IMG/VR virus record: IMGVR_UViG_3300033145_003233
Span: 483,944 to 547,943 of that record
Strand: one strand, 5' to 3'
Length of the DNA: 64,000 bases
Positions 14,501 to 58,487 of this stretch are shown in pieces; position 1 is the stretch's first letter; each line of letters begins with the position of its first letter. Both the position numbers and the translations under genes were made by a program. The notes beneath the pieces are model-generated. The model worked only from the letters and a program-made list of their open reading frames with translations, had not been told where the DNA came from and did no database searches.

Positions 14501-17500
14501 AATAGATTGAGCTATATCTCTCGTTGTGCCTACATCTCTTGGGGCCATCTCTTTTTTAGTCTTATTAGCCTCGGAAGCTATTTGTCTTACAAATTGATCG
14601 GTAACATGGGACTCTAAAGCTGCTCCTTTTAGATATTTATTAGCACCAACCGCTAACGTCTCAGCATGACCTGCCATTGTAGCCTCAGCCTGTCTACTCA
14701 AACCTTCTAGTTGATCATAAAATACATCTCTTTCGGCTCTTTCAAATTGCCTCCATCCTCCAGTTTCCTTAGTCACTCCCATTCTTGAAGCAGTTAAGGT
14801 ATCATAAGCCATAGCCCACGCATCTCTTCCACCAGATGCTATAAACTGACCAAACTGATTCATTTTAACAGCGCCGACTCCAACATTTTCTGCAATATCT
14901 CCAAAAGCATCCCGAAGAGCAAAAGCACCACTAGCTGCTGATCTAACTGATCCCTCTAATCTCATAATCTGAGCAGTATTTTGCTCAGCATTCATTATAA
15001 TTTCACTAAATCCTTCTGCCCCTACATTCATAGCAGAAATAACAGAAATCCACCTATCTCTTAAAGCTTTTACAGCTTGTGCTTGACGCATTTGAGCATT
15101 AGCTATCCCTGTTTCCAACTCAACAACCTTCGCTTTTGCTCTAATATTTTCAGAAGATCCATCTTTAAATTTTCTAATAATTGCCGTTTGCACTGATAGT
15201 TGTTTTTGTAACACATCTATATTTTTTCCTTCTGCTTTATATGCCCTTACCCTCATTTCAGCGCTAGCCCCAACACCGATGGCATAATTATCTGCCAATT
15301 GAACTAAAACACTAGACTTTTGAGCAACAGCTTCAGTATATTTTAACTGATCTTGAAATATATTACCCGCCTGCAAAAGAATCTTTGTGCGTTCAACAAC
15401 TTTTTGATTTATCCTATCTTCTGCTTGAAGAATAACCTTATCAATAGCCGCCTGATCAAGAAGCCCTACCTTCATATCAACAAGAGTTTGAAACATGCCC
15501 TGTTCTTGTTTGCTTCTTTTTTCATTAGATGCTTCTTTCCTTGCGTCTAACCCTTCTGATATTTTCATTAATGCAACCATATCCTGTTGAGCAACAATCT
15601 CCTGGTTCAAGAATAACAATGATTTTTCAATTGCTCCAGTCATGACACTAAAATCTATTTGTCCAGTGATGGACATTTTTTCTATAATATTACTAAGATA
15701 AGATGTTTGAGCTTGATACAAACCATTAATAGCAGCTACAACATCCTTTTGTTTCTGAACTACAGTAGTTATGCCATCCATTCTACCTGCTATAACTGCT
15801 TGCAGCCTAGAAAGTCGCTTATACTCATCATTTCCTTCTTCTATAGTTTCAACGATCTCATGTAAATTTTTAACTCTTTTCTGACCTTTCTTAATAATAG
15901 TTTCTGCTATTCTAATTTGAGGAAGGTCTAAATCTTTTCTTCTAGTCTCAAGCAACGTCTTGGCCCTATTGATCTTCTCCTGCTCTTGCTCCATAACTCT
16001 TTGAACAGCATCTGTTGAAGTCTCTTTGCCGACTAAATCTACATCAATATCAAAATATTTTAACTTAAATTTGCTAAGAATCTCTTTATCTATTTTTTTT
16101 CTCTGCTCATCTAAAACTGTATTGGCATCAATTAACTCTGTAGACACTTGCCTATATAGGGCGTTAATAGCCTTTCCTCCTGTTACGGCAGCGATATCCT
16201 CATCTCTCACTTTTTTAATATCAACTTGTAGATTTTTGAGTTCTGCTGCTTTTGTGCCCATTTTTGCCAATTCTTCTTTGAAATCTGGAGGGATCTTTGC
16301 TTTTACCTCTGCCTCAATTTTTCCCTTTTTGCCAAGCAAATTTTCTATGCCGATACCAACTGACTTCCATTGGGTAGCTGCTCCAATTATACCTCCAGCT
16401 ACTCCCCCTAAAGCAGTCCCGATACCTGGAGCTATAAAAGTTCCTATAGTGGCTCCAATTTTAGCCCCACTAGCAAGAGCCAATCCAGCTCCCGCTAGAC
16501 CTACTGCTCCAGCGGCTTGACGATGCCCTCCTCTTTCTAATGCTTCTGCTCCTCTACCTGCTGCCCATGAGCCTCCAGCTAATAGACCTCCTGCTCCTAG
16601 TCCCTTAAGGGCGGTTAAGCCTCTTGCTTTAAATAATCCTTGGAGACCCATTGGGGCAATAGCTGGTACAGGTGCTTTCAAACGCCCGACACCTTTTGTC
16701 GAGAGTTTTTGCATAAGTGCCATTTCTTTAAGATTTACAACTTTAACTCTCACAGGAGCACCAACTGCCCCAGTGACCATTCCGAGCATTCCTCTACCCT
16801 TACCAAATGATCCAGCCCCACCTGCCTTAGCAGCTTTAGCTAACCCACCACCGCCACCTAATAAACTACCTGCCATACCCCCGCCAAGAGTAGCAATAAA
16901 TCCACCAGCAATTTTCAAACCGGCATAAGCAAGACCAACCTTCCCCAATGTTCCAAGCCACGACTTAGTTCCTTCTCTAATTTCTCTTAAGAAATCAGTA
17001 ACATGGGCTAAGTAAGGTAGAATAGACTCCCCAACTGCCAAACCAACAAACTCAATTTGACGTTGAAATTCTTGAGCAGCTTGAATATTCCTTTCCATCT
17101 CTCTTTGACGAGTTTTATCAGAACCTATGATCTGTTGATTACCACTTATATAGGAAGAAAGTTGCTTATATTGAGCATCTGTAATTTTGCCAATAAAATA
17201 TAAATTTCTTATTCTATTTTTAAGTGAGATCTTTTCTGCTGCATCTAAAGTGGCCCCCACTTTAGATAAATTAGCTAATCCCATAGCCAATGATGGATAT
17301 TCTTGAGAAACAGCAGCTATAGCACCTTGCATTTTTCCTATAGCCTGAGCATTAGCTCCAACAATATTCCTAGTTCTTTTTAGAATATCCTCAAATTGAC
17401 TAAGAGATATAAACCTCATACCTGTCTGAAATTCATCAAATAATTGAATCGTCTCTTTTCTAGTAAGACTTACTGAAGAAGCTACTCTTGCTAAAGTTCC

Positions 17501-17944
17501 TTCTAAATAAGACAGCCCTATCCCCAAACGATTAACACTAGCAGACACATCAAGAAGTGATTTATTATAATCTACTGTTAGACGAAGTGCCGACCCAAAA
17601 CTAGCGGGCATAACCATATGCTTAAAAGCTGCCTTTGCCTCAGCACCAGTTGACCGTAACCCACCCCTAAGATTTTCTATAGCCCTTGTTGTTGCTTTTA
17701 CTTGTTTTTGTTCTCGCTTTAGACCATCAATAGCAATCTTATTTCTTGCTTTATACCCGCCTATAAGCGTTTTAACAGCCTTATCTAGACCCCCATATTG
17801 TATCTTTAAAGCATTTACATTACGGAGTGCCTCTTTCTCTTTGTTGCATATTTCTTGAAAGGCCGCTGCTGCATCTGGAACCCCAGACACTGCCAGCATT
17901 ATTTCTAGTCTATTAAAAAATTCTTGTTGTTCTTGATCGGGCAT
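2525..17944 (-). CDS. Giant tape-measure-like protein, 5139 aa
   Basis: Follows tail tube and G/GT chaperones. N-terminal ~1100 aa is helical with a Gly/Ala-rich amphipathic segment (GAKIGATIGTFIAPGIGTALGGVAGGIIGAA), followed by long internal repeat arrays. Confidence 0.75.
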   Translation of the reverse strand: MPDQEQQEFFNRLEIMLAVSGVPDAAAAFQEICNKEKEALRNVNALKIQYGGLDKAVKTLIGGYKARNKIAIDGLKREQKQVKATTRAIENLRGGLRSTGAEAKAAFKHMVMPASFGSALRLTVDYNKSLLDVSASVNRLGIGLSYLEGTLARVASSVSLTRKETIQLFDEFQTGMRFISLSQFEDILKRTRNIVGANAQAIGKMQGAIAAVSQEYPSLAMGLANLSKVGATLDAAEKISLKNRIRNLYFIGKITDAQYKQLSSYISGNQQIIGSDKTRQREMERNIQAAQEFQRQIEFVGLAVGESILPYLAHVTDFLREIREGTKSWLGTLGKVGLAYAGLKIAGGFIATLGGGMAGSLLGGGGGLAKAAKAGGAGSFGKGRGMLGMVTGAVGAPVRVKVVNLKEMALMQKLSTKGVGRLKAPVPAIAPMGLQGLFKARGLTALKGLGAGGLLAGGSWAAGRGAEALERGGHRQAAGAVGLAGAGLALASGAKIGATIGTFIAPGIGTALGGVAGGIIGAATQWKSVGIGIENLLGKKGKIEAEVKAKIPPDFKEELAKMGTKAAELKNLQVDIKKVRDEDIAAVTGGKAINALYRQVSTELIDANTVLDEQRKKIDKEILSKFKLKYFDIDVDLVGKETSTDAVQRVMEQEQEKINRAKTLLETRRKDLDLPQIRIAETIIKKGQKRVKNLHEIVETIEEGNDEYKRLSRLQAVIAGRMDGITTVVQKQKDVVAAINGLYQAQTSYLSNIIEKMSITGQIDFSVMTGAIEKSLLFLNQEIVAQQDMVALMKISEGLDARKEASNEKRSKQEQGMFQTLVDMKVGLLDQAAIDKVILQAEDRINQKVVERTKILLQAGNIFQDQLKYTEAVAQKSSVLVQLADNYAIGVGASAEMRVRAYKAEGKNIDVLQKQLSVQTAIIRKFKDGSSENIRAKAKVVELETGIANAQMRQAQAVKALRDRWISVISAMNVGAEGFSEIIMNAEQNTAQIMRLEGSVRSAASGAFALRDAFGDIAENVGVGAVKMNQFGQFIASGGRDAWAMAYDTLTASRMGVTKETGGWRQFERAERDVFYDQLEGLSRQAEATMAGHAETLAVGANKYLKGAALESHVTDQFVRQIASEANKTKKEMAPRDVGTTRDIAQSIAAGGATGGFQMGPGFQKIQLPPVKMDSKWLRALREAPKGTASRLIINEKRDAIPVYVVNISDLRNLRDVGIGREIKATVRGEDVTPGPMQPKAVAPSSTFKFHEALTALSASEKTKAEGIIHLEKYVKMDEEIDVAEILSTGNLSKEGEKYFKAIQKIGVEVIDQVRMQELISRTREIMAYDELKAATLKEGMLTTLNERMRVLGTAGADSFKWRSKAVELETEIVAHRKKALFLAQSQLAGQREIQGDISSSQRKEAQFKKNITDEVKQQARFMRVLFQGMAVSMDGIEGAVEEKIVKDPLKIYYQNITKEIIRISKEYNLPPEKVLTYYTGFTKEIMRVAKEQNLPPLEVITRYSGFTREIKRFADEVGLPSKKVPEIFSGFVSEIYRVAELTEQPPKRVEEIIVGYTKVLQRYATDKGLSLEELLINYEGITSGVDAVKREVIEFGLNTDDLFLAYSGETAAKDRITRNIVEVTKMPEEVEVQYDNIINKFRPHLEHVNIPPSKIPVMLRGIKDSFIQYTLYGDEIPKQISGEVQGVKESILQYVSYTTLPSEKIPAFIKRAITSYAQSMEYKDLPPAQIPTYVTDFINNIKQYASYTVIPPEKVNMEVDKFIESYRQEAQYPEKISQEVQFFVRDVMADFTQTAYYPIKPPAKANAWLTNIINSWNQKVVYGEVPPEEIPGYMSGAIDRLKQYVEYDDEQFPHEKVHAEIINIIRDFKQKAEYKPVSDEVQLFVTDLMESITQRAVYPLMPSEKIRTFVKDTLRFYQQRLVYSDLPEENIPSFISGFINDINQLVKYKEIPPEDVSATIKGVIQEYKQESRYKDFPIEVDFFISDVISSMIQHADYQTEISDKITMAVENVKKFTKQEAVYIQDIPEEILTFVRDAKSSFVQHMKYEQLPKYRVPAFIQGAIELYNQHLRYTELPDKIIPASIKEVITQFEQYFSYADIPENKIDVVVRKVIDSFTQYGDYRTLPREVSLFLEGAIDEFTQSIEYKDAIPETMDAILTGAQKSFVQNILYSELPDSQIPGFVKQYLKYLRQSVIYRELPPRSVVGVMHNFETAFDQWAIYQEDVPKEVQAFIRGSKAAFVQRVTYEDFPPEIIKGIIKDSMSALRQVVDYREVPPRNIPASIRNVMEDLTQYATYEDVPKTRFEVILRRLKESFTQYAMYPDLPKEAQIFLDGSIEAFAQRATYLKLPEEEVPGLISDYIKSFVQHIYYDEIPPENIPAYIQEIIKEFRSTVQYQDLPPERVETFVENYVSSFRQEAVYKEAPPIYLHTKIYDAIDSFNQFVKYGILPPEEVAMKLSGWRDQFVSKIVEENIPPEKSALIFTGWRDILKSELEIEENPFDVLVKVFSRVEEATTDVAIRLQQSINAAASNLGIRSDQFVMDYSPIYKIIEDISDSADVSIDSVFDTFRQLNDIILSVGIPDVDAGSIKKVQATLIRQSSAIFESINKQIEALDNVDIQVIFDALPDVVSMLAKSEPEKDVDLDISKFPDEIKAKLLGIPDAEILLTGIAETIKVPVKQGDISGLEVVAYYEVAEQFVKIPTIVEGEVKPSILQFPEQDVYNLFTELNNLITSVYVPKVDPQRIRAIEDTLRKQSAEIFRSIEQQIEGLNDEQVRVIFKALPEVVSMMVESEPTPLVKLDISSFPDGIAADLQDIPRAEIKLTEIARIIRVPVEEGDLSGVEVKAYYDIAEQIIKLPTQIEGDIKPSVLQFPEDDVVALFNRLNTLITSVYVPKVDPAHLAKVQDTFKKHSSAIFESLHEEIDGLKDTDVKVIFEALPTIISMMAKSEDPTKPVELDISNFPDEVRAKLEKIEEPMVKLEGIAKSIQIPARQNFSDLEIEAFYNIAEQVVDMPVVVQGQVDPTVLRFPEEDVMRIFERLNYVIASTYVPKVNLEEVKNIQETIKEQSSIIFKSIKDQIETLDDSDVEVLFRALPHTIAMTAKTPLTDPILLDISSFPGELPVELAEVPPVKTALTDIAETVRIPIVEGEMRGLEVTAYYKLLQEVIKIPAKVEGDIRIPILQFSDDDVYNLFNKLDTAISSIEIRDVDPDSIKKVQATLFKQSTAIFGSIEKQIQGLNNLEIDVLYEALPSVVSMLAESKPEQIVDLDISKLPGTIEGRLEKMPDAVFALTEIAKTIKVPVKDGNLRDIEAEAYYDVAELIVAMPTKVRGEPSAAVLRFPDKIEKVLLKTKVIEKPEEAHVIIKSLEDVYKVTADIRIPDMLPVVARNLGYDSEIEFESDFSPVFNSIKEMSMATGRSVDEIFDAMKSWPNKIDNIFSDFNIDERRIDKIKRASEIKMEDIYISLGKAFSHNIMAINEINPQLNKVVDKVFEKTFDDISSEDRQIIIKSIPEVLELYGDPENIERKVKTVVEDAPEKIGLRAIDVPTVTAILSQVPREVALDLDKQNLRGLEAEAYVKNLVTEFSILADWSKLPTEVVFKLPQVLDSILLNAQLPQEVDVSTILDLTEEAYHVVGDVEGTDRRPSVLITNVDKVFEVELPTPDLTKELNMMATSMNISTTKLLTDFGGLNRKITDISLATSQPFDDVLARAIRFSSSLDDRLKRVGKSWGLDDTQIIKIKEAAVDSAQRISNVLKTKFEGLADITLPNNVSALELIAKNVPEFIELTAKDEFDKKYRYDILLQGMPEEVTMQGVTKRIPRVEFEVEELSDAILVPIDDRELDWKGVKAYVEAIKLLYRKEDVTIGEPPELAVLFNMDKMNVPAEKATAVLGNLQKFYEKIKEVDIEITDTPTIILQNIAKSYVQPDVQTPVGEMTDLLDSLAESMMIVDASDKAKFVNSFDELNTAASNMSLKMGISISDIADLYNKFAGEKAPELNVDFGKIVKDSFADIKLPREKFDDFKEQMVFSASKILSSISGQIQDGLPPDIVTVIIKEMPHLFTAAVDVKNRPERAEIVLKDVEKYLEYEAGTEINTSSIKDIFDSISQAIYEPVGKLGLVETRIDEYKNRVLDLVEKTLLGINAENIGVIGKTAKYILNFSEVDKLINETISELRVDFEEIIDPDKIDKGVLMSSLIKFHQDFETYIRSPQKMLSAIHIPEGVESIDIGLPMDKLARLFPNIEVEINEATRALNLDKQQFVKYFSEFYRSVNDFSEETGVSISNFLESIIGTATSAEEIVEGVGKVPVITLDIGKKNYDRIYNELKSIVDAMEIETKDVRFKDLLVNFGNVYSSTRDIVANTQAFINKAEKTSSFLQELSIDGILSKEEINRIREGIYTSPDFDFDQMNGAIDRLGEFGKTVQEATNNVSDMKNVYDGLKGSGSMSIKEIRVAHGVVAKAQKDLGIAQEDFDDELGNIISRFLSQYKKSASEQKGSVMALASVQLEQEVSKSAGRKFAMGREEEIIAEGGKPGLVASGLSTEYLDKAKEIQAPYERKTREIQDVDKVIETKNREMTHLENILYAPDTGIITLEGKLDLTGKSEAARQKVRDEGAKIAAQIQTLREQADKVALMIREEPREEKEIEKYEGVPPGFTIGAPSLKAIRRKKIKTQREKKTPSYMYLQAFKQYEESGSDEDEGVLVRMERETGVGVGKEWSREVHAKTIKEGEASGDIIKNLSDELIADAAANREQWEKNRRVYDSKIEGLKDQPPFQYAQAAEAGRDDTKRKLETVYSEREGLFAQRSRLQIEQEKIGRTEVATMPAPQTIIVPSEDTARIAVVPPEAPAAPGAVREVEGYVDWEKRREREQEKIVAKRGVGPKVSRRRGARGREAGEGRRTRLDIMMGREYQPRPSRSERRMEHRLSRDDGRRGGGRTIRPTRRMPPRIGEEEEFGRWEQLMPPKMFGLLRSGEAMPGEREAPQEVKVAVGREAPQEVKVAVGREAPQEVKVAVGREAPQEVKVAIEREALQEVKVGADLVGRPGREGVTSEVSARGQQLLIPTESVYGTDPTKPVFSEAEKGLISAPTSANTVTVVLENARFDINISGLNDLSTKVAKGINTALHEAVPGMMSETLGTYSA
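2847..3020 (-). repeat. 36-bp tandem repeat, about 5 copies, encoding REAPQEVKVAVG near the TMP C-terminus
   Basis: Unit ctaccttaacttcttgaggagcttctctcccaacag is near-identical in the central copies; flanking copies are degenerate. Confidence 0.95.
7920..10210 (-). repeat. Five ~155-aa protein-level repeats inside TMP
   Basis: Units start PDVDAGSIKKVQ / PKVDPQRIRAIE / PKVDPAHLAKVQ / PKVNLEEVKNIQ / RDVDPDSIKKVQ, spaced ~465-470 nt. Each has QSxxIFxSIxxQI, ALPxxxSM, DISxFP and AYY motifs. Boundaries approximate. Confidence 0.85.
10490..13590 (-). repeat. About 40 degenerate ~25-aa repeats inside TMP with a ~99-aa higher-order period
   Basis: Recurrent QxxxYxxxP every 24-27 aa; about every fourth unit carries E[VIA]xxF[VIL]. 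Boundaries approximate. Confidence 0.8.
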
Positions 17945-26437: not shown

Positions 26438-29400
26438 TTATGAGAACAATTTATTGAAGAAATGGTCATATTCCCTTCTAGCACTATAAATAAGTTCATC
26501 TATTAAGTAGGAGTTGGAAGATGTAGAAGCGTACTTATAATTTTTCATCTTGGTAAATTGAGATATTTTTGTCATAGCTCTTTGATATGATATATATGCT
26601 AATTTTAGAGCAGATAAATCTATTTGATAATTATGCCGTTCTAACATAGACTTTAATTGTAATTTGATACTATTAGCTTTATCTTGCATCTGTTTTAAGC
26701 CAGGAACAGTCTTCTTCTTACCTTCCTGAGATTTATAACCACTTTTATGCTTATCTATTTTTTCATTTATTTTGGCTAATTTACCAGATGTAGCTTTCTG
26801 CCCTAATGCTGTATAATAACTATCTGGCAACTGACTAGCTCCATCCCACTTGTCCAAAGTTCTTTCAACCTCTTCCCTCAATTGTGGGGCTAATTTACTT
26901 ATAACCCTTCTATATGCAATATCATCTTTTACAATCCTCATAGCTTTATCATTAGCATAACCGACATATTCTGCCTTCTTTTGTTCTAGTTCTTTAATTT
27001 TATCTACTTTGTCTTCCGCTAATCTTTGCAAAGAATCAAAAGTGCTATATAGTTTAAAAAATTGACCATACCATGTGGCAGAATTTATTGTTGGAGCACC
27101 ATGAGATGTTCTTCTAGAATGTTTAAGACCATCATTATATACTTGATATAGCGTCTTAACATGTGATGGAGGTTCTTCCCCTCTTATTAAATAATATAAT
27201 TCCGTATTAGTTCTTTGTTTATCATCAAATGGATTAACAGAGCTACCAGTAGATAAAAAATTCCTCATCTTGGTGGGATGATGATCAAATAAATCTATTA
27301 ATGCTCTTCTAGCAGATGGTGAGCCTCCTCCACCTGTTTCCACGGAACGGGCAAGATATCCTAAAAGAGGAGTGTATGTTGTCCCCATAATAGCTTTCAA
27401 CTGCTTAACTTCTATTTTCTCCTCTACTGATAATTCTTTCATCGCTTTATCTTTCTTCTCTGGATCTTTATATTTTTTAGCTCTACGCTTTTCTATATTT
27501 TCTTTCTTTTTATAAGTATCTGTAAAAACTTTTATTTGATCATCACTTTGAATAGTTGTCATATAAATAAAATTATCTATTTTTCTATTAGCCTCAGATG
27601 GTCTATCTTTTGGAGTGACATTCGAAAATTGCTTTAGAAGAGAATCTGTCCTAGGATCTGTTCTTAGCACTTCTCTTATCCCATCTATAGTGCTATTCTT
27701 TTTGTTTAATTTCTTGATCTGTCCTTTTATTTCTCCCAAATTAGCCTCTGCTAGGAATGGAATCCTATAATTAGTCATCTGCTTCCAATCAGGAACGAAT
27801 GGAGAAGCTATCTCTCCATCTGCCAACCTCTTCTTGTATATTTCAACATATTCTTGAAAACCTTGTACAGTAGTTCTTTCTCCTTCTTCGTCATCCTTAG
27901 ATTTACCAATATTAAACATCTGCTTTAATATGTCCGATGGAATATTTATCTTCCCGAATCTATTTTTATAACTCATAGTTTTGTCCTCTTGACGAAGCGC
28001 TCTCCCTCTTGTCTTGAATAAAGCTTCAAGCTGTTGTGTAATAGATTTAGAATAAGAATTCATTCTTTCCGCAAATGTGTACCTCTTAATAAAAGGCTCC
28101 TGTGATTTTCTTATTCTTTTTATGTCATCAGTATCTATCATCCCAACCATTTTTTGATCTAATCCTCTGCACTTATCTACATTTTCATTCATCATAGTAT
28201 GAACAGAATCTGACGCTAATTGCTGCATAATATCCAGCTCTCCTTGCAAATAGCTTCTCGTAATGGCTGCCACCATTTTAGATGACCTATCCATATCTGA
28301 GTCACTAACAGGATCTCTGCCCATATCTTTAGAGGTAAGACCCGCTAGGTTTTTAGACATAGGATCACCTTCTTCGTCTTCTCCCTGATTATAACTAGCC
28401 CCACTCCCACCAACATCTACATTAAAAATATCTGTTTTTAGCCATTGAGATATAGCAGGATCAAATTTACTTATAAGTTCTTCTAATTTTTTATATAATT
28501 CCTGAGCCTTTTCATTATGTAATATATTTAATATTCTTGATTTATTATGTTTTAGCCCCCATGCCTGAGATAGTATTTCATTAGCTTCTCCATGCAACCC
28601 CATTCTAGCTGATTCTGTTTTTAATCTATCTTCAAAAGATGGATCTGATTTTATAATAGGAACAAGATGATGAGGATATTTTAAAAAGAAATTCATTCTC
28701 TGATCCAGCCCACCTTCTGGAGGAGAACTTAATTTGTTAGCTGTTGCCTGACTTATCATGGCTTCATATTTTTCATTAAAAATATTTCTTGGAGGAATAG
28801 GATGCCCCCAACCTTCCAATACAGCCAATCTTTCCGGCGGCTTTAAATCCAAATAAAGTTTAGCTGCCTTAATATCTAGTCGTGGATCGGGTAAGGATAT
28901 CGGTTGAGCATAAGGATCTGGGCCTCCTTTTCTGGCTTTATCTTCTTCAATAGCCCTTGCTCTCGCTTCTTCTTCAGCCATCTCTGATTCTCTTTGAGTT
29001 ATATCTCCCATCAATCCTTCTGTCTTGGCCAACATGGTATCAACAAATAAACTAGCCTTTTGTTTATCCCCCACAAAAGCCTCCAACTTCGCCACAAAAG
29101 AGTCTTTATATCTAGAATTAGTAAGCATGGCTTGATATAAAACAGGATCTGGGGATAAATAAGAATCAGAAGGAGATACATTTTTTTTGGTCATTAGCTC
29201 AGGCAGAGCATATTGGCTTTCAACTTCCAGTTCTTTTTGATTTTCCCTTATCCACATATCCATCCTTTGATCTATATCTTCTGGCAAATCTCCTGAATGA
29301 TAAACTACTGGAGATGATTGAGGAGGCATTTCTTGAGCTGGCTCCTGAATAGCATTTGGATCTTCGACAAATTCCGGATGGGCCTTATAAAATGCTGCTT

Positions 29401-29524
29401 CTTCGGCAGTCCAATTTTTATCTGCTTTCTTCCTTCTTAAATTAAACGAACTATAAGAGCAGGAATTATTTTTAACAATTCTAAGAATTCTTTGTAACGC
29501 GACCATTATTTTCCCATAGAGCAC
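26438..29524 (-). CDS. Large hypothetical protein, 1028 aa, possibly head-internal
   Basis: Long charged helical ORF; no catalytic motif recognised. Confidence 0.7.
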   Translation of the reverse strand: MLYGKIMVALQRILRIVKNNSCSYSSFNLRRKKADKNWTAEEAAFYKAHPEFVEDPNAIQEPAQEMPPQSSPVVYHSGDLPEDIDQRMDMWIRENQKELEVESQYALPELMTKKNVSPSDSYLSPDPVLYQAMLTNSRYKDSFVAKLEAFVGDKQKASLFVDTMLAKTEGLMGDITQRESEMAEEEARARAIEEDKARKGGPDPYAQPISLPDPRLDIKAAKLYLDLKPPERLAVLEGWGHPIPPRNIFNEKYEAMISQATANKLSSPPEGGLDQRMNFFLKYPHHLVPIIKSDPSFEDRLKTESARMGLHGEANEILSQAWGLKHNKSRILNILHNEKAQELYKKLEELISKFDPAISQWLKTDIFNVDVGGSGASYNQGEDEEGDPMSKNLAGLTSKDMGRDPVSDSDMDRSSKMVAAITRSYLQGELDIMQQLASDSVHTMMNENVDKCRGLDQKMVGMIDTDDIKRIRKSQEPFIKRYTFAERMNSYSKSITQQLEALFKTRGRALRQEDKTMSYKNRFGKINIPSDILKQMFNIGKSKDDEEGERTTVQGFQEYVEIYKKRLADGEIASPFVPDWKQMTNYRIPFLAEANLGEIKGQIKKLNKKNSTIDGIREVLRTDPRTDSLLKQFSNVTPKDRPSEANRKIDNFIYMTTIQSDDQIKVFTDTYKKKENIEKRRAKKYKDPEKKDKAMKELSVEEKIEVKQLKAIMGTTYTPLLGYLARSVETGGGGSPSARRALIDLFDHHPTKMRNFLSTGSSVNPFDDKQRTNTELYYLIRGEEPPSHVKTLYQVYNDGLKHSRRTSHGAPTINSATWYGQFFKLYSTFDSLQRLAEDKVDKIKELEQKKAEYVGYANDKAMRIVKDDIAYRRVISKLAPQLREEVERTLDKWDGASQLPDSYYTALGQKATSGKLAKINEKIDKHKSGYKSQEGKKKTVPGLKQMQDKANSIKLQLKSMLERHNYQIDLSALKLAYISYQRAMTKISQFTKMKNYKYASTSSNSYLIDELIYSARREYDHFFNKLFS

Positions 29525-29579
29525 AAATTAACCATAAATGAATATTATGATTTTTATGGTACAAACCTTTATTTTTCCC

Positions 29580-30017
29580 TTATTCATCAGGGTCATTATC
29601 TTGAGGATCATACACTATTAAACTAACATTGCTGTTTTGAGTGCATTTAATAGAATGAAGACCGTACATAACAAATTTTACATCTTCTGGTTTATAGTGC
29701 TCCATTTGCTCTCTTACTACTTGCCAAAATTTTGTAGGAACATAAACGCTTTTTCCTTTTAATATCTTAGCTCTTAATGACAGAACATCGTATCCATATG
29801 CCTCCTTAAGATCATCAAGCCTTTCATCTATTTCATTACGATAAAAGAGGTCATTCCATCCATCAGCCAAATAAGAATTATCTAGAAATCTCTTTTGCTC
29901 TGACGGCAAACTCTTATATATGAGTTTTCTTTGCGCTCGAGACAAATATTTAGCATAGTACCAATATTCACTAAAACTATTAAAAACTGGCTTTTTTAAC
30001 ATTTTATATGCCTCCAT
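29580..30017 (-). CDS. Hypothetical protein
   Basis: 145-aa ORF. Confidence 0.65.
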   Translation of the reverse strand: MEAYKMLKKPVFNSFSEYWYYAKYLSRAQRKLIYKSLPSEQKRFLDNSYLADGWNDLFYRNEIDERLDDLKEAYGYDVLSLRAKILKGKSVYVPTKFWQVVREQMEHYKPEDVKFVMYGLHSIKCTQNSNVSLIVYDPQDNDPDE

Positions 30018-30021
30018 GAGA

Positions 30022-30303
30022 TTATAAATTTACTATCTCCATACAAACAGCATGATGAGTCACAAATGCCAAACAATCAACATTGTTTTCCTTCAAAAAA
30101 ACAATAAATTTATCTTGGATCTCTTTAATTTGTTCTGGTGAAGCTGGATCAGCAGAAGTGCCAACTCTTATATGAATAAATTTTCCCTCTAAATCTTTAA
30201 TCTTTGTAGTTTTAACAACTTTCTTATTTTGCTTTTTAGAAATTGTTTTCTTGGATTTACTTTTATTCATATTTTCTTTCCCTTTTTTTATTTCTTTACT
30301 CAT
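30022..30303 (-). CDS. Hypothetical protein
   Basis: 93-aa ORF with upstream AAGGAG. Confidence 0.6.
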   Translation of the reverse strand: MSKEIKKGKENMNKSKSKKTISKKQNKKVVKTTKIKDLEGKFIHIRVGTSADPASPEQIKEIQDKFIVFLKENNVDCLAFVTHHAVCMEIVNL

Positions 30304-30604
30304 TGTTATTCTCCTTCATTTTTGTTTCAAATCTTGGAGGAACTACCTTAATATCTCCACGATCTAATAACCATGTATTCTTAGTATTTAACCTATCATT
30401 GCAATATTCAATAATCATCTTACTTTCTAATCTAATAGGCTTACCACTTAATAAAAACTCTATTAAACTGGGATTAAGATCTTTTGTCTCTTCAGTTACT
30501 CTAACAACCATCTCCCGAAGTATGGCTGACGGAATGAACATAAATTCAGCACCATTAAAGGCATAATTTAAAGCTATATTTTTTTCATGTTCTGTTAATC
30601 CCAC
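30296..30604 (-). CDS. Hypothetical protein
   Basis: 102-aa ORF, GTG start. Confidence 0.55.
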   Translation of the reverse strand: MGLTEHEKNIALNYAFNGAEFMFIPSAILREMVVRVTEETKDLNPSLIEFLLSGKPIRLESKMIIEYCNDRLNTKNTWLLDRGDIKVVPPRFETKMKENNNE

Positions 30605-30741
30605 AATAAAGATCCCTTAAATTAATAATCTATTTAAGTATCGGCAAAATTGACTGCCAAAAATGAATAAGATATGACATAATGGCAGTTTCTATTTTTA
30701 TAAATCCTAGATTCTGCACGATTATATAAGATTTGGAACAT

Positions 30742-30757
30742 TGGCACGAAAATTGCT
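30742..30757 (+). promoter_or_regulatory. Sigma54 (RpoN) -24/-12 promoter
   Basis: TGGCACGAAAATTGCT is an exact match to consensus TGGCACG-N4-TTGC[AT], in an intergenic gap. Confidence 0.7.
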
Positions 30758-30767
30758 AATTACTAAG

Positions 30768-30858
30768 ATAGCAGAGAGCGCCAAATGTTACGTATCAAGC
30801 AAATGTATGCCAGTTGCGTCACCGGGAAGGCCATCTTAATTTATTAAGGTGGTCTTTT
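30768..30858 (+). ncRNA. Candidate ~90-nt sigma54-driven small RNA, or 20-aa peptide mRNA
   Basis: Bounded by the sigma54 promoter and a plus-strand terminator. Contains ATG 30785..TAA 30847 (MLRIKQMYASCVTGKAILIY). Start site inferred from -12 spacing. Confidence 0.4.
30827..30858 (+). terminator. Plus-strand intrinsic terminator
   Basis: AAGGCCATCTTAAT/ATTAAGGTGGTCTT pairs fully via two G-U pairs on the plus strand and has A-C mismatches on the minus strand; ends in TTTT. Confidence 0.65.
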
Positions 30859-31419
30859 CTACTCTACATTGGGATTATAATCTGGTTGCCTTTGGATGTT
30901 ATTATCTTCTTCAGACATTTCTATATCTGATACTATCTGTGCTTCATGAAAAGATCCAATAGCATCTAAAATATTACGATCTGAAATAACGCTTTTTGTG
31001 GCATAATCTTTAGCATATAAAATTCTAATATTAGAAGCCATTCTATTAGTATAATCATAATCATACCTATATGAAATCCAGATAGTAGTAGAAGCAGGTC
31101 TTTTACTAAAAGTTTCTGGAAGAGGAGATCCGCCCGATGAAAACCACCTACTAAATTTCTGCCAATCAACAGCTATTTCAGATTCTCCCTGTTGATTAGA
31201 TGAGCCACCTAATTCAGGACCAGCAGGAGGAATATCTCTTTCAGTCATTTGACCAGGAAGATTAGCATCTCCAACAGGCATTTCTTGGGCTTCTTTCTTA
31301 AGATGTTTAATAGTCTTTATCTCTTTCATTACTATACCATTATAGATATTTTTCTTTTTTCCTGCAAATAAAAAATAAGCCACACAGAAAACCATGTGGC
31401 CTATTTCAGGATAGAGCAA
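30859..31419 (-). CDS. Hypothetical protein (true start may be internal MKEIK...)
   Basis: 186-aa ORF; contains KHLKKEAQ. Confidence 0.6.
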   Translation of the reverse strand: MLYPEIGHMVFCVAYFLFAGKKKNIYNGIVMKEIKTIKHLKKEAQEMPVGDANLPGQMTERDIPPAGPELGGSSNQQGESEIAVDWQKFSRWFSSGGSPLPETFSKRPASTTIWISYRYDYDYTNRMASNIRILYAKDYATKSVISDRNILDAIGSFHEAQIVSDIEMSEEDNNIQRQPDYNPNVE

Positions 31420-33583: not shown

Positions 33584-34171
33584 CTATAACAATTTTTCAT
33601 ATTCTACAAAATTATGATCATCAAAGCAAACTATTTGGACCAAATCTATATAAGTATATACATGACTATTAAAAAAATTCCAAAAAGCATTAATTGCTAC
33701 TTCTGCGGCAACATCTTTTGGAAAACAATACGCTCCTGTAGAGATACAAGGAAATGCTATAGATTTTAATCCCTGAAGCTCTGCTAATAACAAACAACTT
33801 TTATAACAGTTTTCTAGCATCTCTTTTTTTATTTCGGGAGAAACACCATCAGTCCAAACAGGCCCAACGGTATGAATTATATATTTAGAAGGCATATTAT
33901 AAGCCCCAGTAATCCTGGCCTCTCCTTGAGGGCATCCATATAAATTAAGACATTCTCCCAGAAGTTTTTGCCCAGAAGCCTGATGCATAGCTCCATCAAC
34001 TCCTCCTCCACCTGTTAAATCATCATGCGCAGCATTTACTACTGCATCTACTTCCAATTGAGTTATGTCCCCCCGAATTAACTCGATATCAACATATGGA
34101 GTCTTTTCATTAGTTTCTCTCTCCATCATACTTACTTCTAAATCTTTACTAATTTCTTCCATGTCAGACAT
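33584..34171 (-). CDS. Macro-domain ADP-ribose hydrolase, YmdB/MacroD-like
   Basis: GDITQLEVDAVVNAA...GGGGVDGAMH...IIHTVGP...SIAFPCISTGAY. Confidence 0.9.
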   Translation of the reverse strand: MSDMEEISKDLEVSMMERETNEKTPYVDIELIRGDITQLEVDAVVNAAHDDLTGGGGVDGAMHQASGQKLLGECLNLYGCPQGEARITGAYNMPSKYIIHTVGPVWTDGVSPEIKKEMLENCYKSCLLLAELQGLKSIAFPCISTGAYCFPKDVAAEVAINAFWNFFNSHVYTYIDLVQIVCFDDHNFVEYEKLL

Positions 34172-35249: not shown

Positions 35250-36182
35250 TTACCCTAAAATATTACAAATTTTGTCAATTTGTATCTTATGGGTCTTTAT
35301 TAATTTCTTTGCTTCTAACTTGAGATTATCAATATTCCCTTTTGTAACATTATCCATATCATCTGAAGCCACAACAAGACTTGTTTGTAATCTTATAAAA
35401 GAATCTCCAAGAATTTGTTTCATCTGATAATCTACAACATCACTAGCCCCATCAAACATGCAACTCAACAAAGGAACCGTCCATCCAACAAGACCCCAAT
35501 CCTTAGCCTCTGAATAAGAAATAGATCTTGTTAATTCTCCAGTCCCTAAAGACACAACAAAAATTTCTTTTTCATCAGGAAATAATCTTTTACATTCAGC
35601 ATACGCAGATACAGCTGGATTATTTACAAATACCCCACCATCAATCAAAACCCTTGTACCGCTACCCACTTGGATAGATGCTGGTTCAAAATACGTTGGA
35701 GCAGCCGAAGTAGCTCTTGCTACAAGTCTCATTTCTGTAGTATTCCACTCATCTCTCCAACTCTTAAAGAAATAAGGCTCTCTATTCTGTATATCATAAC
35801 TAGTTATCAACACATTTTTCAACGAAGCTCCCAAAGGCTCATTTTTAAAATATTCTTTAAGAACTTTTTCTAAACCTTTCTCAGAATATTTCTCATTACC
35901 CAAACCTCCTATTGAAGAGAACCCCTTCCAAAGAGAACGTGGGAAAATCTCTTTTCCTTTTTTCTCATACAGTTCAGCAAAATCCTGAGCAGTATATTTA
36001 GAGCCTCCATTGCCATCGTTGTGGGACATACCCAACGCTATTATCCCACCAGTTGAAGTCCCAGCTAAAAAATCAAATAATTTAGCGACACTCTTCCCTG
36101 TTCTTTTTTCAATCTCAGCCAATATTAATGCTGGGATGATTCCTCTAATCCCACCACCATCTATAGATAAAACACATTTCAT
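35250..36182 (-). CDS. Patatin-like phospholipase
   Basis: DGGGIRG oxyanion loop, GTSTG nucleophile elbow, DGG catalytic Asp. Confidence 0.92.
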   Translation of the reverse strand: MKCVLSIDGGGIRGIIPALILAEIEKRTGKSVAKLFDFLAGTSTGGIIALGMSHNDGNGGSKYTAQDFAELYEKKGKEIFPRSLWKGFSSIGGLGNEKYSEKGLEKVLKEYFKNEPLGASLKNVLITSYDIQNREPYFFKSWRDEWNTTEMRLVARATSAAPTYFEPASIQVGSGTRVLIDGGVFVNNPAVSAYAECKRLFPDEKEIFVVSLGTGELTRSISYSEAKDWGLVGWTVPLLSCMFDGASDVVDYQMKQILGDSFIRLQTSLVVASDDMDNVTKGNIDNLKLEAKKLIKTHKIQIDKICNILG

Positions 36183-39417: not shown

Positions 39418-40434
39418 TTACTTCTCTCCTATCTTATATCGCATAGAAGGGATAATGTGGGGACGAATGAGATCGAAAAAAGAATGAACAGAATGGAATT
39501 TAACAATAATTCTCCCTCTTGCAGAACGATAATGACAATCAATATTCCATCTCTCTTTGAACCATTCTATAATTAAATCACACGATTCTTTAGAAAAGGA
39601 ATCTGTGCAAAGAATATAATTACTTTTATCTATATATCCATCATCCATCGCCCATACAGCAACTGACAACTCCGTTAAATTATCTAGCACCTCTCTCGTA
39701 ATTTGCTTATCTTCTTTATAAAATTGAGATATTATTTCTTCTATCTCTGTGTTAGCTGTTGTATAAAATCTCCAACTAACATACGTTTTATCAAATCTTT
39801 TATCATACTGAGAATATTTCTTTAAAGATCCCTTACTAGCCAAATTCTCCAATTCTATATATTTCCATCTCAAATAGCTCTCCTGCTTATCACTATGCCC
39901 AAATCCAACAGAAGAACCATGCCTCTTATCATTTCTTTTAGCATCCCCCATGAGGCTACCATATATTATTTCTCTTTGTCTTTGAGAAAGAGGCTCTTCC
40001 GTTTTCTTCCTATTTATATATGTGGCCCCTCTTCTCTTAATACCATATAATTGTCTCAAATAGGTGAGATCTTCTCTTGTTACAGAAAATTCTTTACAAA
40101 TTTCATCTAACGACATCCCCTTCTCATAATTATACTCAAATTGCTCTTTTGTAAGATTTATCTTTCCTTGACAAAAATTGCTAAAAAATTGCAATATCTT
40201 TTTTGATATACCTGTTTGGGCCATATCATTTATAGATAGACCATCCTCTATATTATTTTTAAATTCCCGGAAGGTTATATATTGATTTGTCCTCTTTACA
40301 GATCCATTCTTAATATCTGCATCAAGATATGGCTCTGCTAATACCCAATTATATTTAGACAAAAGCCTCGATAGCTTCGATTCTTTCATCTTATTAATGG
40401 ATTCTATCGATAATGTCTGACCTTTTACTGGCAT
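39418..40434 (-). mobile_element. Free-standing LAGLIDADG homing endonuclease (338-aa CDS)
   Basis: Two LAGLIDADG helices IIYGSLMGDA and LSVAVWAMDDG; NUMOD3-like N-terminus KGQTLSIESINKMKESK. Confidence 0.85.
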
Positions 40435-57692: not shown

Positions 57693-57695
57693 GCC

Positions 57696-58487
57696 TTATC
57701 TCCACATATACAACATTTGGATATGATTATTAGCCCCCAGGAATAAAGCATGGGTATGAAAACCTGAAGATAAAAATCTATTCAATAATTGATCTCTCCT
57801 ACTCTTATCAAAGTAAAACATAAAATTATGATATTCCATACATATTTTATTTATTTTCAAAAGATTATGATCAGAGATACCTTTAAAGATGTCTAATTCC
57901 GACCCTTCTGCATCAATCTTTAAGAAATCTATATGAGATTTAATATTATCTAAAAAATAATTGAGAGAAATACATCCGATAATTTGTGTCTCTCCTGTTT
58001 TTGTATTATTAGTATCATTATTTAAAATAGTATGCCCACCAGTATATTTATCTATATTTAAAAAACTCACTTTATTTTCATTAGAAAACCCAAAATTATA
58101 AACTTTTTGATTACTAGATTGATTTCTTTCCAGGCAATAAAAACTTTTTATCTCTGGCTCAAATGAGAATATTTCTCTTCCACCATTCATATAAGCATAC
58201 CTACTGAATATCCCAACATTAGCTCCTATATCAACAACAATATCTCCTTTTTCTACCTTGCATTGATTATAAGAATAATTTTCCTGCTCAAATATTTCTG
58301 CATATATGCAACAAACTGTTTCATAATCTTTTCGATTATCCCATACAAATCCCATGGATTCTTCATATAAATTCATTTTCTTCAAAAAACCATCATCTGA
58401 TACAATCACAAAATCATCATTAGATATAATTGGAGATGGATCTACCACCCTAGTATCTCTATAAACATTTTTTAATTCATCGTACAT
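57696..58487 (-). CDS. FkbM-family methyltransferase
   Basis: VVDIGANVGIFS...FSFEP...IDFLKIDAEGSE. Confidence 0.9.
   Translation of the reverse strand: MYDELKNVYRDTRVVDPSPIISNDDFVIVSDDGFLKKMNLYEESMGFVWDNRKDYETVCCIYAEIFEQENYSYNQCKVEKGDIVVDIGANVGIFSRYAYMNGGREIFSFEPEIKSFYCLERNQSSNQKVYNFGFSNENKVSFLNIDKYTGGHTILNNDTNNTKTGETQIIGCISLNYFLDNIKSHIDFLKIDAEGSELDIFKGISDHNLLKINKICMEYHNFMFYFDKSRRDQLLNRFLSSGFHTHALFLGANNHIQMLYMWR

What the first reader, a model, noticed from the sequence alone, without database searches (positions are those of the whole stretch)
30653..30858. Lone antisense sigma54 promoter-terminator unit encoding a small RNA or 20-aa peptide
Seen: in a window where essentially all genes are on the minus strand, a perfect TGGCACG-N4-TTGCT sits on the plus strand (30742-30757). 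About 70 nt later is a hairpin that pairs fully only on the plus strand. Between them is a 20-codon ORF (30785-30847). An inverted repeat ACTGCCA-N23-TGGCAGT (30653-30689) lies upstream across an AT-rich spacer, where an enhancer-binding site would be. Established: sigma54 promoters need bacterial enhancer-binding proteins and often drive sRNAs. Inference: the phage couples a regulatory RNA or peptide to a host sigma54 signal such as nitrogen status or envelope stress.
Basis: partly seen in the sequence, partly recalled or inferred. Interest (0 to 1): 0.7.

Follow-up and report, generated by a model that had tools for sequence, protein, structure and literature searches.

The report
Orphaned sigma-54 heat-shock promoter relic
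The lone antisense sigma-54 promoter and terminator in this 548-kb phage are real, but they are the empty shell of a host-regulated small heat-shock protein (hsp20) gene that related phages still carry, not a demonstrated small-RNA or peptide gene.

Summary
The perfect TGGCACG-N4-TTGCT is the only exact match in the 547,943-bp genome (about 0.03 expected).

Six independent related phage contigs carry the same arrangement at the same place, divergent from the homologue of the 102-aa gene. Each has a 14-bp site (CTGCCA-N3-TGACA-like) starting 66-70 nt upstream of TGGCA. Then come a sigma-54 -24/-12 element, a 41-54-nt leader with AAGGAG, an intact hsp20 gene and a terminator.

In the window's own clade hsp20 is decaying:
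- L083 keeps a C-terminal hsp20 fragment but has no promoter.
- L002 keeps almost nothing.
- The window and L082 keep the upstream sites, promoter and terminator but no recognisable coding sequence.

The 20-codon ORF is not conserved: in L082, 8 codons are frame-shifted and the ribosome-binding-like stretch is deleted. No RNA family or covariation supports a structured sRNA.

All 11 consensus promoter positions and the proximal upstream site are unchanged between the window and L082, while 3 of 5 spacer bases changed. The promoter may therefore still be in use.

Verdict: a genuine sigma-54, activator-dependent promoter, most likely a gutted hsp20 "moron". Residual function is open. No sequencing run was listed, so transcription could not be checked, and the host is unknown.

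The parts
30296..30604 (-). 102-aa gene of unknown function, first gene of the sense operon that diverges from the antisense unit. The start position is confirmed by an ATG at the same place in relatives.
   Evidence: 29 homologues at E<=0.001; no Pfam or PHROG family
30605..30652 (-). Conserved leader and promoter block of the 102-aa gene. On the minus strand it holds CGATA-N-TTAAATAGAT and the ribosome-binding site AAGGGA 8 nt before the start.
   Evidence: Conserved in L002, L082 and L083 and recognisable in all distant relatives. It is not a genome-wide motif.
30653..30668 (+). Distal upstream site (site 1), ACTGCCAAAAATGAAT, a degenerate copy of the CTGCCA-N3-TGACA motif.
   Evidence: It is kept in L002, L082 and L083. 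It has one change in L082.
30674..30689 (.). Proximal upstream site (site 2), TGACATAATGGCAG, whose reverse complement is CTGCCATTATGTCA. It starts 67 nt upstream of TGGCA, the conserved position in relatives, and is the likely enhancer-binding-protein site.
   Evidence: a site at -66 to -67 in window, L082, L195, L007, L009, L079 and L081; at -70 in L006. It is identical in L082. The motif occurs only twice in 548 kb, with 0 in the control.
30690..30741 (+). AT-rich spacer of 52 nt between the upstream site and the promoter. It may allow DNA bending; this is inferred.
   Evidence: 3 substitutions against L082
30742..30757 (+). Sigma-54 -24/-12 promoter element TGGCACG-N4-TTGCT. The transcription start is inferred near 30768-30770.
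   Evidence: Unique in the genome. TGGCA and TTGC are invariant across homologous loci while the spacer varies.
30758..30823 (+). Residual transcribed body in place of the hsp20 leader and coding sequence. Its origin is unresolved.
   Evidence: No significant similarity to hsp20 5' or 3' sequences. It has three indels against L082. No Rfam family matches.
30785..30847 (+). 20-codon ORF (MLRIKQ...ILIY), probably fortuitous. Its last six codons lie in the terminator stem-loop.
   Evidence: In L082, 8 codons are frame-shifted and the purine-rich stretch before the ATG is deleted.
30824..30859 (+). Plus-strand hairpin followed by UUUUC, homologous to the hsp20 terminators of relatives (5' arm AAGGCCAYC, 3' arm GTGGYCTT).
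   Evidence: strand asymmetry; L081 and L195 terminators. The strict scan did not call it.
30859..31419 (-). 186-aa gene of unknown function with a TAG stop at 30861-30859. It has no sense-strand terminator of its own.

Best explanation
The unit is the regulatory shell of a self-contained accessory cassette, a phage "moron". Related huge phages carry the cassette intact at this exact position, divergent from the 102-aa gene. Its parts are one or two upstream activator sites (consensus CTGCCA-N3-TGACA), an AT-rich spacer, a sigma-54 -24/-12 promoter, a leader with a ribosome-binding site, an hsp20 (small heat-shock protein) gene and an intrinsic terminator.

Shown:
- The architecture and its spacing are conserved across six independent relatives.
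- hsp20 is absent from this genome.
- hsp20 fragments survive in two close relatives.

Inferred:
- In the intact cassettes, host RNA polymerase with sigma-54 sits on the promoter, and a host enhancer-binding ATPase bound at the upstream site switches it on, probably under heat or protein-folding stress. Phage hsp20 is thereby plugged into a host stress regulon.
- In this phage and L082 a deletion removed essentially the whole hsp20 coding sequence and left sites, promoter and terminator.
- The promoter is probably still competent and would give a transcript of roughly 80-90 nt from about 30768 to the hairpin. That RNA has no demonstrated coding or structural function. The default reading is a decaying remnant.
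For: 1. Six independent relatives (L006, L007, L009, L079/L080, L081, L195; 45-51% identity in the 102-aa protein) have an opposite-strand hsp20 directly upstream of the 102-aa homologue. Each is preceded by TGGCAY-N5-TTGCW with 0-2 mismatches.
2. The upstream site starts 66-70 nt before TGGCA in all of them and in the window.
3. In the DNA alignment, TGGCA and TTGC are invariant while the flanks and spacer vary.
4. Negative control: 0 of 67 bacterial hsp20 loci, and 0 of one other viral hsp20 locus, have such a motif within 600 nt upstream.
5. The genome has no PF00011 hsp20 anywhere.
6. In the window's clade, L083 (72% identity) has an hsp20 C-terminal fragment (hmmsearch E 7e-11) plus the same terminator arm but no promoter. 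L002 (70%) has only a possible LIIKGE fragment (E 0.007). L082 (92%) has the same shell as the window.
7. The window's hairpin arms match the hsp20 terminators of L081 and L195.
8. The same site-plus-sigma-54 module precedes Pfam-confirmed hsp20 in unrelated IMG/VR contigs L087 and L137. It also precedes dnaK in two Bacteroidota genomes.
Against: - No transcript data could be obtained: no run was listed. Promoter activity and the transcript ends are therefore inferred.
- The 66-nt body between promoter and terminator shows no significant similarity to hsp20 sequences. The deletion breakpoints are not mapped, and replacement by unrelated DNA cannot be excluded.
- The shell is more conserved between the window and L082 than a neutral remnant should be. 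It has 13 substitutions in about 196 nt, against 21-22% at third codon positions (binomial P about 1e-8). There are 0 changes in 25 consensus or site-2 positions against 3 of 5 in the promoter spacer (Fisher P 0.0025). This argues for residual function or recent recombination.
- The host is unknown, and no enhancer-binding protein or sigma-54 is encoded by the phage.
Confidence: 0.72

Rival explanations
1. The shell has been retained for a function of its own. One possibility is a sigma-54- and activator-dependent short RNA. Because the 186-aa gene has no sense terminator, this RNA would be perfectly antisense to any read-through mRNA joining the 186-aa and 102-aa genes. Another is a stress-gated roadblock or interference device between the two sense genes. 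A third is a decoy that soaks up the host activator and sigma-54 holoenzyme once the phage genome is amplified.
For: - Perfect consensus promoter, site 2 at the canonical distance, and an intact plus-strand hairpin.
- Between the window and L082, 0 of 25 key positions changed against 3 of 5 spacer positions. The unit as a whole diverged about 3-fold less than third codon positions.
- The minus-strand RNA has no terminator here.
Against: - It is absent from L002 and L083, which are viable lineages of the same clade.
- Three indels totalling 12 nt fall in the roughly 80-nt transcribed body.
- There is no covariation and only a weak consensus fold, and no Rfam family.
- The low divergence could reflect recent recombination.
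- Only two sequences carry the shell.
Confidence: 0.22
2. The unit encodes a 20-aa peptide (30785-30847).
For: An ATG-initiated ORF has a weak purine-rich stretch (AGAGAG) 6 nt upstream. In L082 a -4 and a +1 indel restore the frame, so the first 5 and last 6 residues are kept.
Against: - Eight internal codons are frame-shifted in L082, and the purine-rich stretch is deleted there.
- The conserved C-terminal codons are simply the terminator stem-loop.
- Frame restoration by two indels has about a 1 in 3 chance.
- The ORF is absent from L002 and L083.
Confidence: 0.03
3. It is a sigma-70-type promoter (TTGGCA, 17 nt, TAAGAT at 30741-30769) rather than a sigma-54 promoter.
For: The simple scan lists it at 9 of 12 matches. 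Most relatives also have a TA-rich hexamer 17 nt after TGGCA.
Against: TTGC lies inside what would be the sigma-70 spacer, yet it is invariant at a fixed 5-nt distance from TGGCA[C/T] in all eight loci while the rest of that spacer varies. TA-rich hexamers are expected by chance in these AT-rich leaders. The scan found 6 such promoter-like sites in 1 kb against 4.8 expected.
Confidence: 0.04
4. The motif, hairpin and repeat are a chance coincidence.
For: The motif was found by eye among many possible motifs.
Against: About 0.03 exact matches are expected genome-wide. The same composite architecture recurs at the syntenic site in seven other contigs. It recurs in 0 of 68 control hsp20 loci.
Confidence: 0.01

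Closest known systems
Sigma-54 (RpoN) promoters activated by bacterial enhancer-binding proteins, such as glnAp2/NtrC or pspA/PspF (from established knowledge)
   Same: The -24 GG and -12 GC elements have exact spacing and a consensus sequence. An activator-site candidate is centred roughly 85 nt upstream of the start, across an AT-rich spacer. The unit is independent of sigma-70 signals.
   Different: It lies in a phage genome that encodes neither sigma-54 nor an activator. The upstream motif (CTGCCA-N3-TGACA, or TGGCAG in the palindromic form) does not match any activator site I can name from memory. The activator and host are unidentified.
E. coli ibpB, a small heat-shock gene reported to have a sigma-54 promoter besides its sigma-32 promoter (recalled from Kuczynska-Wisnik et al. 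2001; not checked here)
   Same: A small heat-shock protein gene of the hsp20 family under sigma-54 control.
   Different: That is a cellular gene with no known dedicated upstream site of this kind. Here the cassette is phage-borne, and in this genome the hsp20 gene is gone.
Phage morons: accessory genes with their own promoter and terminator inserted between core phage genes (concept from HK97/HK022 comparisons; from memory)
   Same: A self-contained promoter-gene-terminator unit, present in some relatives (L006, L007, L009, L079, L081, L195) and absent in others (L003/L004, L005, L010). It is transcribed against the flow of the surrounding operon.
   Different: Classical morons use sigma-70 promoters and are best known in temperate phages. 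Here the promoter is sigma-54 and activator-dependent, the phage is a 548-kb genome, and the payload has been deleted.
hsp20 auxiliary genes of cyanophages and large freshwater phages (mentioned in PMC3037559 and PMC7674155, found; not read in detail)
   Same: Phage-encoded small heat-shock proteins as host-derived accessory genes.
   Different: Whether those genes use sigma-54 was not checked here; those papers were listed but not read. The present lineage adds a defined stress-type regulatory module and shows its decay.

Membership tests
Sigma-54-dependent promoter | GG at -24 and GC at -12 separated by exactly 10 nt, within TGGCAC-N5-TTGCW | tested here: met
   Perfect 12 of 12 specified positions at 30742-30757, unique in 548 kb.
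Sigma-54-dependent promoter | The -24/-12 blocks are conserved among homologous loci while the intervening bases are free | tested here: met
   TGGCA and TTGC are invariant in window, L082, L195, L006, L007, L009, L079 and L081. Three of 5 spacer bases differ between window and L082.
Sigma-54-dependent promoter | Upstream activator (enhancer-binding protein) site roughly 80-150 nt from the start | tested here: met
   A 14-bp CTGCCA-N3-TGACA-like site starts 66-70 nt before TGGCA in all eight loci. The palindromic form is enriched, 91 of 145 against 25% expected, in an IMG/VR scan. Binding itself was not tested.
Sigma-54-dependent promoter | Host provides RpoN and a cognate AAA+ activator, and transcription depends on them | not testable with these tools
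   The host is unknown. The phage has no PF00158 or PF04552 match. No sequencing run was listed.
Intrinsic (Rho-independent) terminator | Stable GC-containing stem-loop followed by a U tract on the transcribed strand | tested here: inconclusive
   The plus strand forms a 16-bp stem, and the minus strand is much weaker. The arms are homologous to the hsp20 terminators of L081 and L195. However, there are only four U, partly inside the stem, and the scan did not call it.
HSP20 / alpha-crystallin (PF00011) | Recognisable alpha-crystallin domain in the unit | tested here: not met
   The best frame of 30758-30862 scores E 2.8 against a phage-hsp20 profile. There is no PF00011 match anywhere in the genome.
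Phage moron (autonomous accessory cassette) | Own promoter and terminator, patchy presence among relatives, located between conserved genes | tested here: met
   It is present with hsp20 in six relatives, absent in L003/L004, L005 and L010, and decayed in L083, L002, L082 and the window. In the window the payload is missing.
Known bacterial or phage sRNA family | Match to a curated RNA family, or a conserved structure with covariation | tested here: not met
   No relevant Rfam match even at E<=10. The two-sequence consensus fold is weak (-7 kcal/mol) with 0 compensatory pairs. Two sequences give little power.
Conserved small protein | Reading frame and translation signals conserved in relatives | tested here: not met
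   In L082, 8 of 20 codons are frame-shifted and the purine-rich leader is deleted. The ORF is absent in L002 and L083.

The most novel reading that the evidence does not exclude
After losing hsp20, the phage kept the sigma-54 promoter, its activator sites and the terminator as a stress-sensing device in its own right. It could make a short activator-dependent cis-antisense RNA acting on read-through mRNA between the 186-aa and 102-aa genes. Alternatively it could act as a multicopy decoy that titrates the host's heat-shock enhancer-binding protein and sigma-54 holoenzyme during genome amplification. More broadly, a family of phages wires genes into a host sigma-54 heat-shock regulon defined by the TGCCA-N3-TGGCA site. 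Some IMG/VR phages appear to run eight or nine genes from such promoters.
Probability: 0.22. Interest if true: 0.75.

Novelty: new variant of a known kind. Interest (0 to 1): 0.5.

Why it matters
Sigma-54 promoters are silent without a signal-activated ATPase, so a phage gene behind one is expressed only when the host senses a particular stress. The comparison shows three things:
- A lineage of very large uncultivated phages placed a chaperone gene under such control.
- The control module (site, spacing, promoter) is conserved enough to be recognised from sequence.
- The module is gained, lost and eroded like any accessory cassette.

This gives a concrete, testable example of phage-host regulatory coupling through sigma-54. 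It yields a candidate DNA site for an unidentified heat-shock activator, and the same site also precedes bacterial dnaK. It is also a caution: a textbook-perfect promoter-terminator pair can be a fossil.

For annotation, the window's unit should be labelled as an hsp20-cassette remnant, not as an sRNA or peptide gene.

Tried and rejected
Searches that found nothing:
- GenBank phages, by blastn of the locus and by tblastn of the 1028-aa neighbour: no match.
- IMG/VR with four flanking proteins: no relatives.
- Public sequencing runs, two queries: none was listed, so no transcript evidence.
- Rfam at a permissive threshold: only chance-level hits.
- Phage-encoded sigma-54 or enhancer-binding protein: none.
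- The intergenic DNA as a repeated or mobile element in the genome: no other copy.
- The sense-promoter block as a genome-wide phage promoter motif: no.

Tests that did not support an idea:
- Similarity of the 66-nt body to hsp20 leaders, coding ends or 3' regions of relatives was not above shuffles.
- An apparent compensatory C-G to U-A change between the window and L082 was not upheld by the consensus fold.

Host inference:
- The nearest cellular hsp20 matches were Acidobacteriota at about 40% identity. The scan was biased by its peptide patterns, and none of them has the promoter.
- The composite site-plus-promoter pattern is not enriched in a Bacteroidota sample: 2 of 301 genomes, and 1 of 61 in the class of one hit.
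- Only 1 of 30 sampled dnaK loci has the promoter.
- The hsp20 clusters of the two dnaK-positive genomes lack it.
- The Atlas look-alike search gave no host signal.

Literature searches found no report of sigma-54-driven phage hsp20.

Full report
**The observation.** The window is the last 64 kb of a 547,943-bp linear virus record with 33.6% G+C. It encodes tailed-phage functions such as a tail tube protein, Laminin_G-domain proteins and glycosyltransferases. Nearly all ORFs are on the minus strand.

- The perfect TGGCACG-N4-TTGCT is unique in the window and in the whole genome on both strands. About 0.03 exact matches are expected from composition.
- The hairpin is strongly strand-asymmetric: a 16-bp stem with G-U pairs on the plus-strand RNA, and three mismatches with no U run on the minus strand.
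- The U tract is short, and a strict terminator scan does not call it.

**Finding relatives.** GenBank phages and IMG/VR gave nothing with the flanking proteins. Searches of the large protein collections did. The 186-aa protein has one 81%-identical relative (contig L002). The 102-aa protein has 29 homologues at E<=0.001. I fetched their contigs.

**What sits at this position in relatives.** In six independent contigs the gene immediately upstream of the 102-aa homologue lies on the opposite strand and is an hsp20 / alpha-crystallin gene. These are L006, L007, L009, L079/L080, L081 and L195, with 45-51% identity in the 102-aa protein. Pfam-family marks come from the collection's precomputed hits, and translations are.
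- Each hsp20 is preceded by TGGCAY-N5-TTGCW with 0-2 mismatches to the full consensus, then a 41-54-nt AT-rich leader ending in AAGGAG and ATG.
- A 14-bp site resembling CTGCCA-N3-TGACA begins 66-67 nt upstream of TGGCA in L195, L007, L009, L079 and L081. It begins 70 nt upstream in L006. L079 has two tandem copies.
- In the window the site at that position is 30674-30689, in inverted orientation. Its reverse complement, CTGCCATTATGTCA, differs by one base from the L009 site.
- The motif occurs only twice in the whole 548-kb genome.
- In a four-way DNA alignment, the promoter columns TGGCA and TTGC stay invariant.
- As a control, none of 67 bacterial hsp20 loci, nor one unrelated viral hsp20 locus, has such a promoter motif within 600 nt upstream.

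**Decay of the cassette in the window's clade.** The genome has no hsp20 anywhere. Four contigs share the 186-aa gene, this gap and the 102-aa gene: the window, L082 (92% identity), L083 (72%) and L002 (70%).
- L083 has no promoter motif. It retains an open hsp20 C-terminal fragment (E 7e-11 against a profile of the phage hsp20 proteins, positions 98-136) followed by the same terminator arm.
- L002 has lost about 137 nt relative to the window, including half of site 2, the promoter and most of the body. It keeps only a possible LIIKGE fragment (E 0.007).
- The window and L082 keep both sites, the promoter and the terminator. The best frame scores only E 2.8 against hsp20, and the 66-nt body shows no similarity above shuffles to hsp20 leaders or ends.
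- The hairpin arms (AAGGCCAYC ... GTGGYCTT) match the hsp20 terminators of L195 and L081.
- Other relatives (L003/L004, L005, L010) lack the cassette altogether. They have a same-strand upstream gene with a sense-strand terminator.

The unit thus behaves as an accessory, self-contained cassette, a moron, that is gained, lost and eroded. Because the three remnant types keep different pieces, the losses were probably independent.

**Is the shell still used?** I compared the window with L082 over 240 aligned nt.
- The intergenic region has 19 substitutions (about 8%) and four indels. Third codon positions of the two flanking genes differ at 21-22%, and four-fold sites at 26-31%.
- For the antisense unit alone, 13 substitutions in about 196 nt gives a binomial P of about 1e-8 under the third-position rate.
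- None of the 11 TGGCAC/TTGCT positions or the 14 site-2 positions changed, whereas 3 of the 5 bases between the promoter blocks did (Fisher P 0.0025).

This is what purifying selection on a working sigma-54 promoter looks like. A recent recombination that makes the region younger than its flanks would also lower divergence, and only two sequences are available.

The transcribed body is indel-prone, with changes of -7, -4 and +1 nt.
- The -7 removes the purine-rich stretch before the ATG.
- The -4 and +1 shift 8 of the 20 codons.
- The conserved last six codons are simply the terminator stem.

The peptide reading is therefore rejected, and a structured sRNA has no support. L002 and L083 show that the promoter is dispensable.

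**Mechanism.** Shown: the composite architecture, its conservation, and hsp20 as its payload in relatives. Inferred from how sigma-54 promoters work in general: the host sigma-54 holoenzyme forms a closed complex at 30742-30757. A host AAA+ enhancer-binding protein bound at site 2 (and site 1) loops over the AT-rich spacer and opens it. Transcription would start near 30768 and stop at the hairpin.

The phage encodes neither sigma-54 nor an activator. The signal is probably heat or proteotoxic stress, on two grounds.
- The payload in relatives is a chaperone.
- An IMG/VR scan for site plus promoter returned 109 stretches, in which the free position strongly prefers the palindrome TGCCA-N3-TGGCA (91 of 145 matches). 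These include Pfam-confirmed hsp20 genes behind the module in unrelated contigs L087 and L137. The only two matches in 301 Bacteroidota genomes both lie directly upstream of dnaK.

That regulon is rare in the sampled Bacteroidota. It does not include hsp20 in those two genomes, so the host lineage remains unknown.

**Rivals.**
- A sigma-70 reading (TTGGCA-17-TAAGAT) is unlikely because TTGC is invariant inside what would be a free spacer.
- Chance is excluded by synteny.
- The live alternative is that the shell was retained for a role of its own: a cis-antisense RNA against read-through from the 186-aa gene (which lacks a sense terminator), an interference device, or an activator decoy. I give this about 0.2.

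**Comparison with known systems and novelty.** It works like a classical sigma-54 / enhancer-binding-protein promoter and like a phage moron. It recalls the sigma-54 promoter reported for E. coli ibpB (from memory). I found no report of phage hsp20 under sigma-54 control in the searchable literature. The element in this window is a remnant, which lowers its own interest. The conserved phage module and its upstream site are a new variant of a known kind and are directly testable.

**Verdict.** Best explanation: a gutted sigma-54-driven hsp20 cassette (confidence about 0.72). Interest 0.5.

Noticed in passing
L130/L159, L090/L153, L084/L134/L163 (IMG/VR contigs 3300036770_006768, 3300034073_004006, 3300035670_000546): These phage contigs (G+C 0.44-0.48, 15-29% complete) carry eight or nine promoters each. 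The form is two CTGCCA-N3-TGGCAG palindromes 14 nt apart, then about 12 nt, then TTTGGCAC-N5-TTGCA, in front of small ORFs without Pfam families. They look like phages that run many genes from sigma-54 promoters with paired upstream sites. No PF00158 activator was found in the fragments.
   Followed up: partly
L193 (G294:C119) and L194/L202 (G114:C1:177601-177690): In two Bacteroidota-phylum genomes (G+C 0.58 and 0.41), a TGCCA-N3-TGGCA site about 75 nt upstream of a sigma-54 -24/-12 element lies directly in front of dnaK. This points to a sigma-54-dependent heat-shock activator in some bacteria. Only 1 of 30 sampled dnaK loci in the phylum has it.
   Followed up: partly
L087:6705-7159, L137:2607-3082, L174:3127-3602, L110: Unrelated low-G+C IMG/VR contigs also have the upstream site plus sigma-54 promoter in front of hsp20. 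PF00011 is confirmed for L087 and L137. The cassette therefore recurs in several phage lineages.
   Followed up: partly
window 30605-30652 (minus strand) and the equivalent in L002-L010, L079-L083, L195: A block, CGATA-N-TT(A/T)3TA(G/T)AT followed by a strong ribosome-binding site, is conserved 25-35 nt upstream of the 102-aa gene start in all relatives. It is not repeated elsewhere in the 548-kb genome. It is presumably the locus-specific promoter or leader of the sense operon.
   Followed up: partly
window 26438-30604 versus L003, L006, L007, L009: Downstream synteny is conserved: the 102-aa gene, a gene of about 90 aa, a gene of about 140 aa, then a protein of 1000-1300 aa. Relatives have a PhoH-like ATPase gene before the large protein, and it is missing in the window.
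   Followed up: no
L006:1-2247: The hsp20-bearing relative also encodes host-like regulators and enzymes just upstream: a radical SAM protein, PTS HPr, a SEC-C motif protein, CsrA and a cytidylyltransferase-like protein. HPr and CsrA could be host-takeover factors and might hint at the host group.
   Followed up: no
window 2525-17944 (minus): A single open reading frame of 5139 aa under the standard code. No evidence of stop-codon reassignment was seen in the window.
   Followed up: no
window 33584-34171, 35250-36182, 39418-40434, 55371-61867: Accessory genes near the locus include a Macro-domain protein and a patatin-like phospholipase. There is also a LAGLIDADG endonuclease, plus two large proteins with family-9 (heptosyltransferase-like) glycosyltransferase domains, one of them also with methyltransferase domains. 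The glycosyltransferases may hint at a host with lipopolysaccharide.
   Followed up: no
window 30859-30861 and 30824-30859: The 186-aa gene ends in TAG directly against the plus-strand hairpin and has no sense-strand terminator. Sense transcription probably reads through the gap into the 102-aa gene and would collide with any plus-strand transcription.
   Followed up: partly
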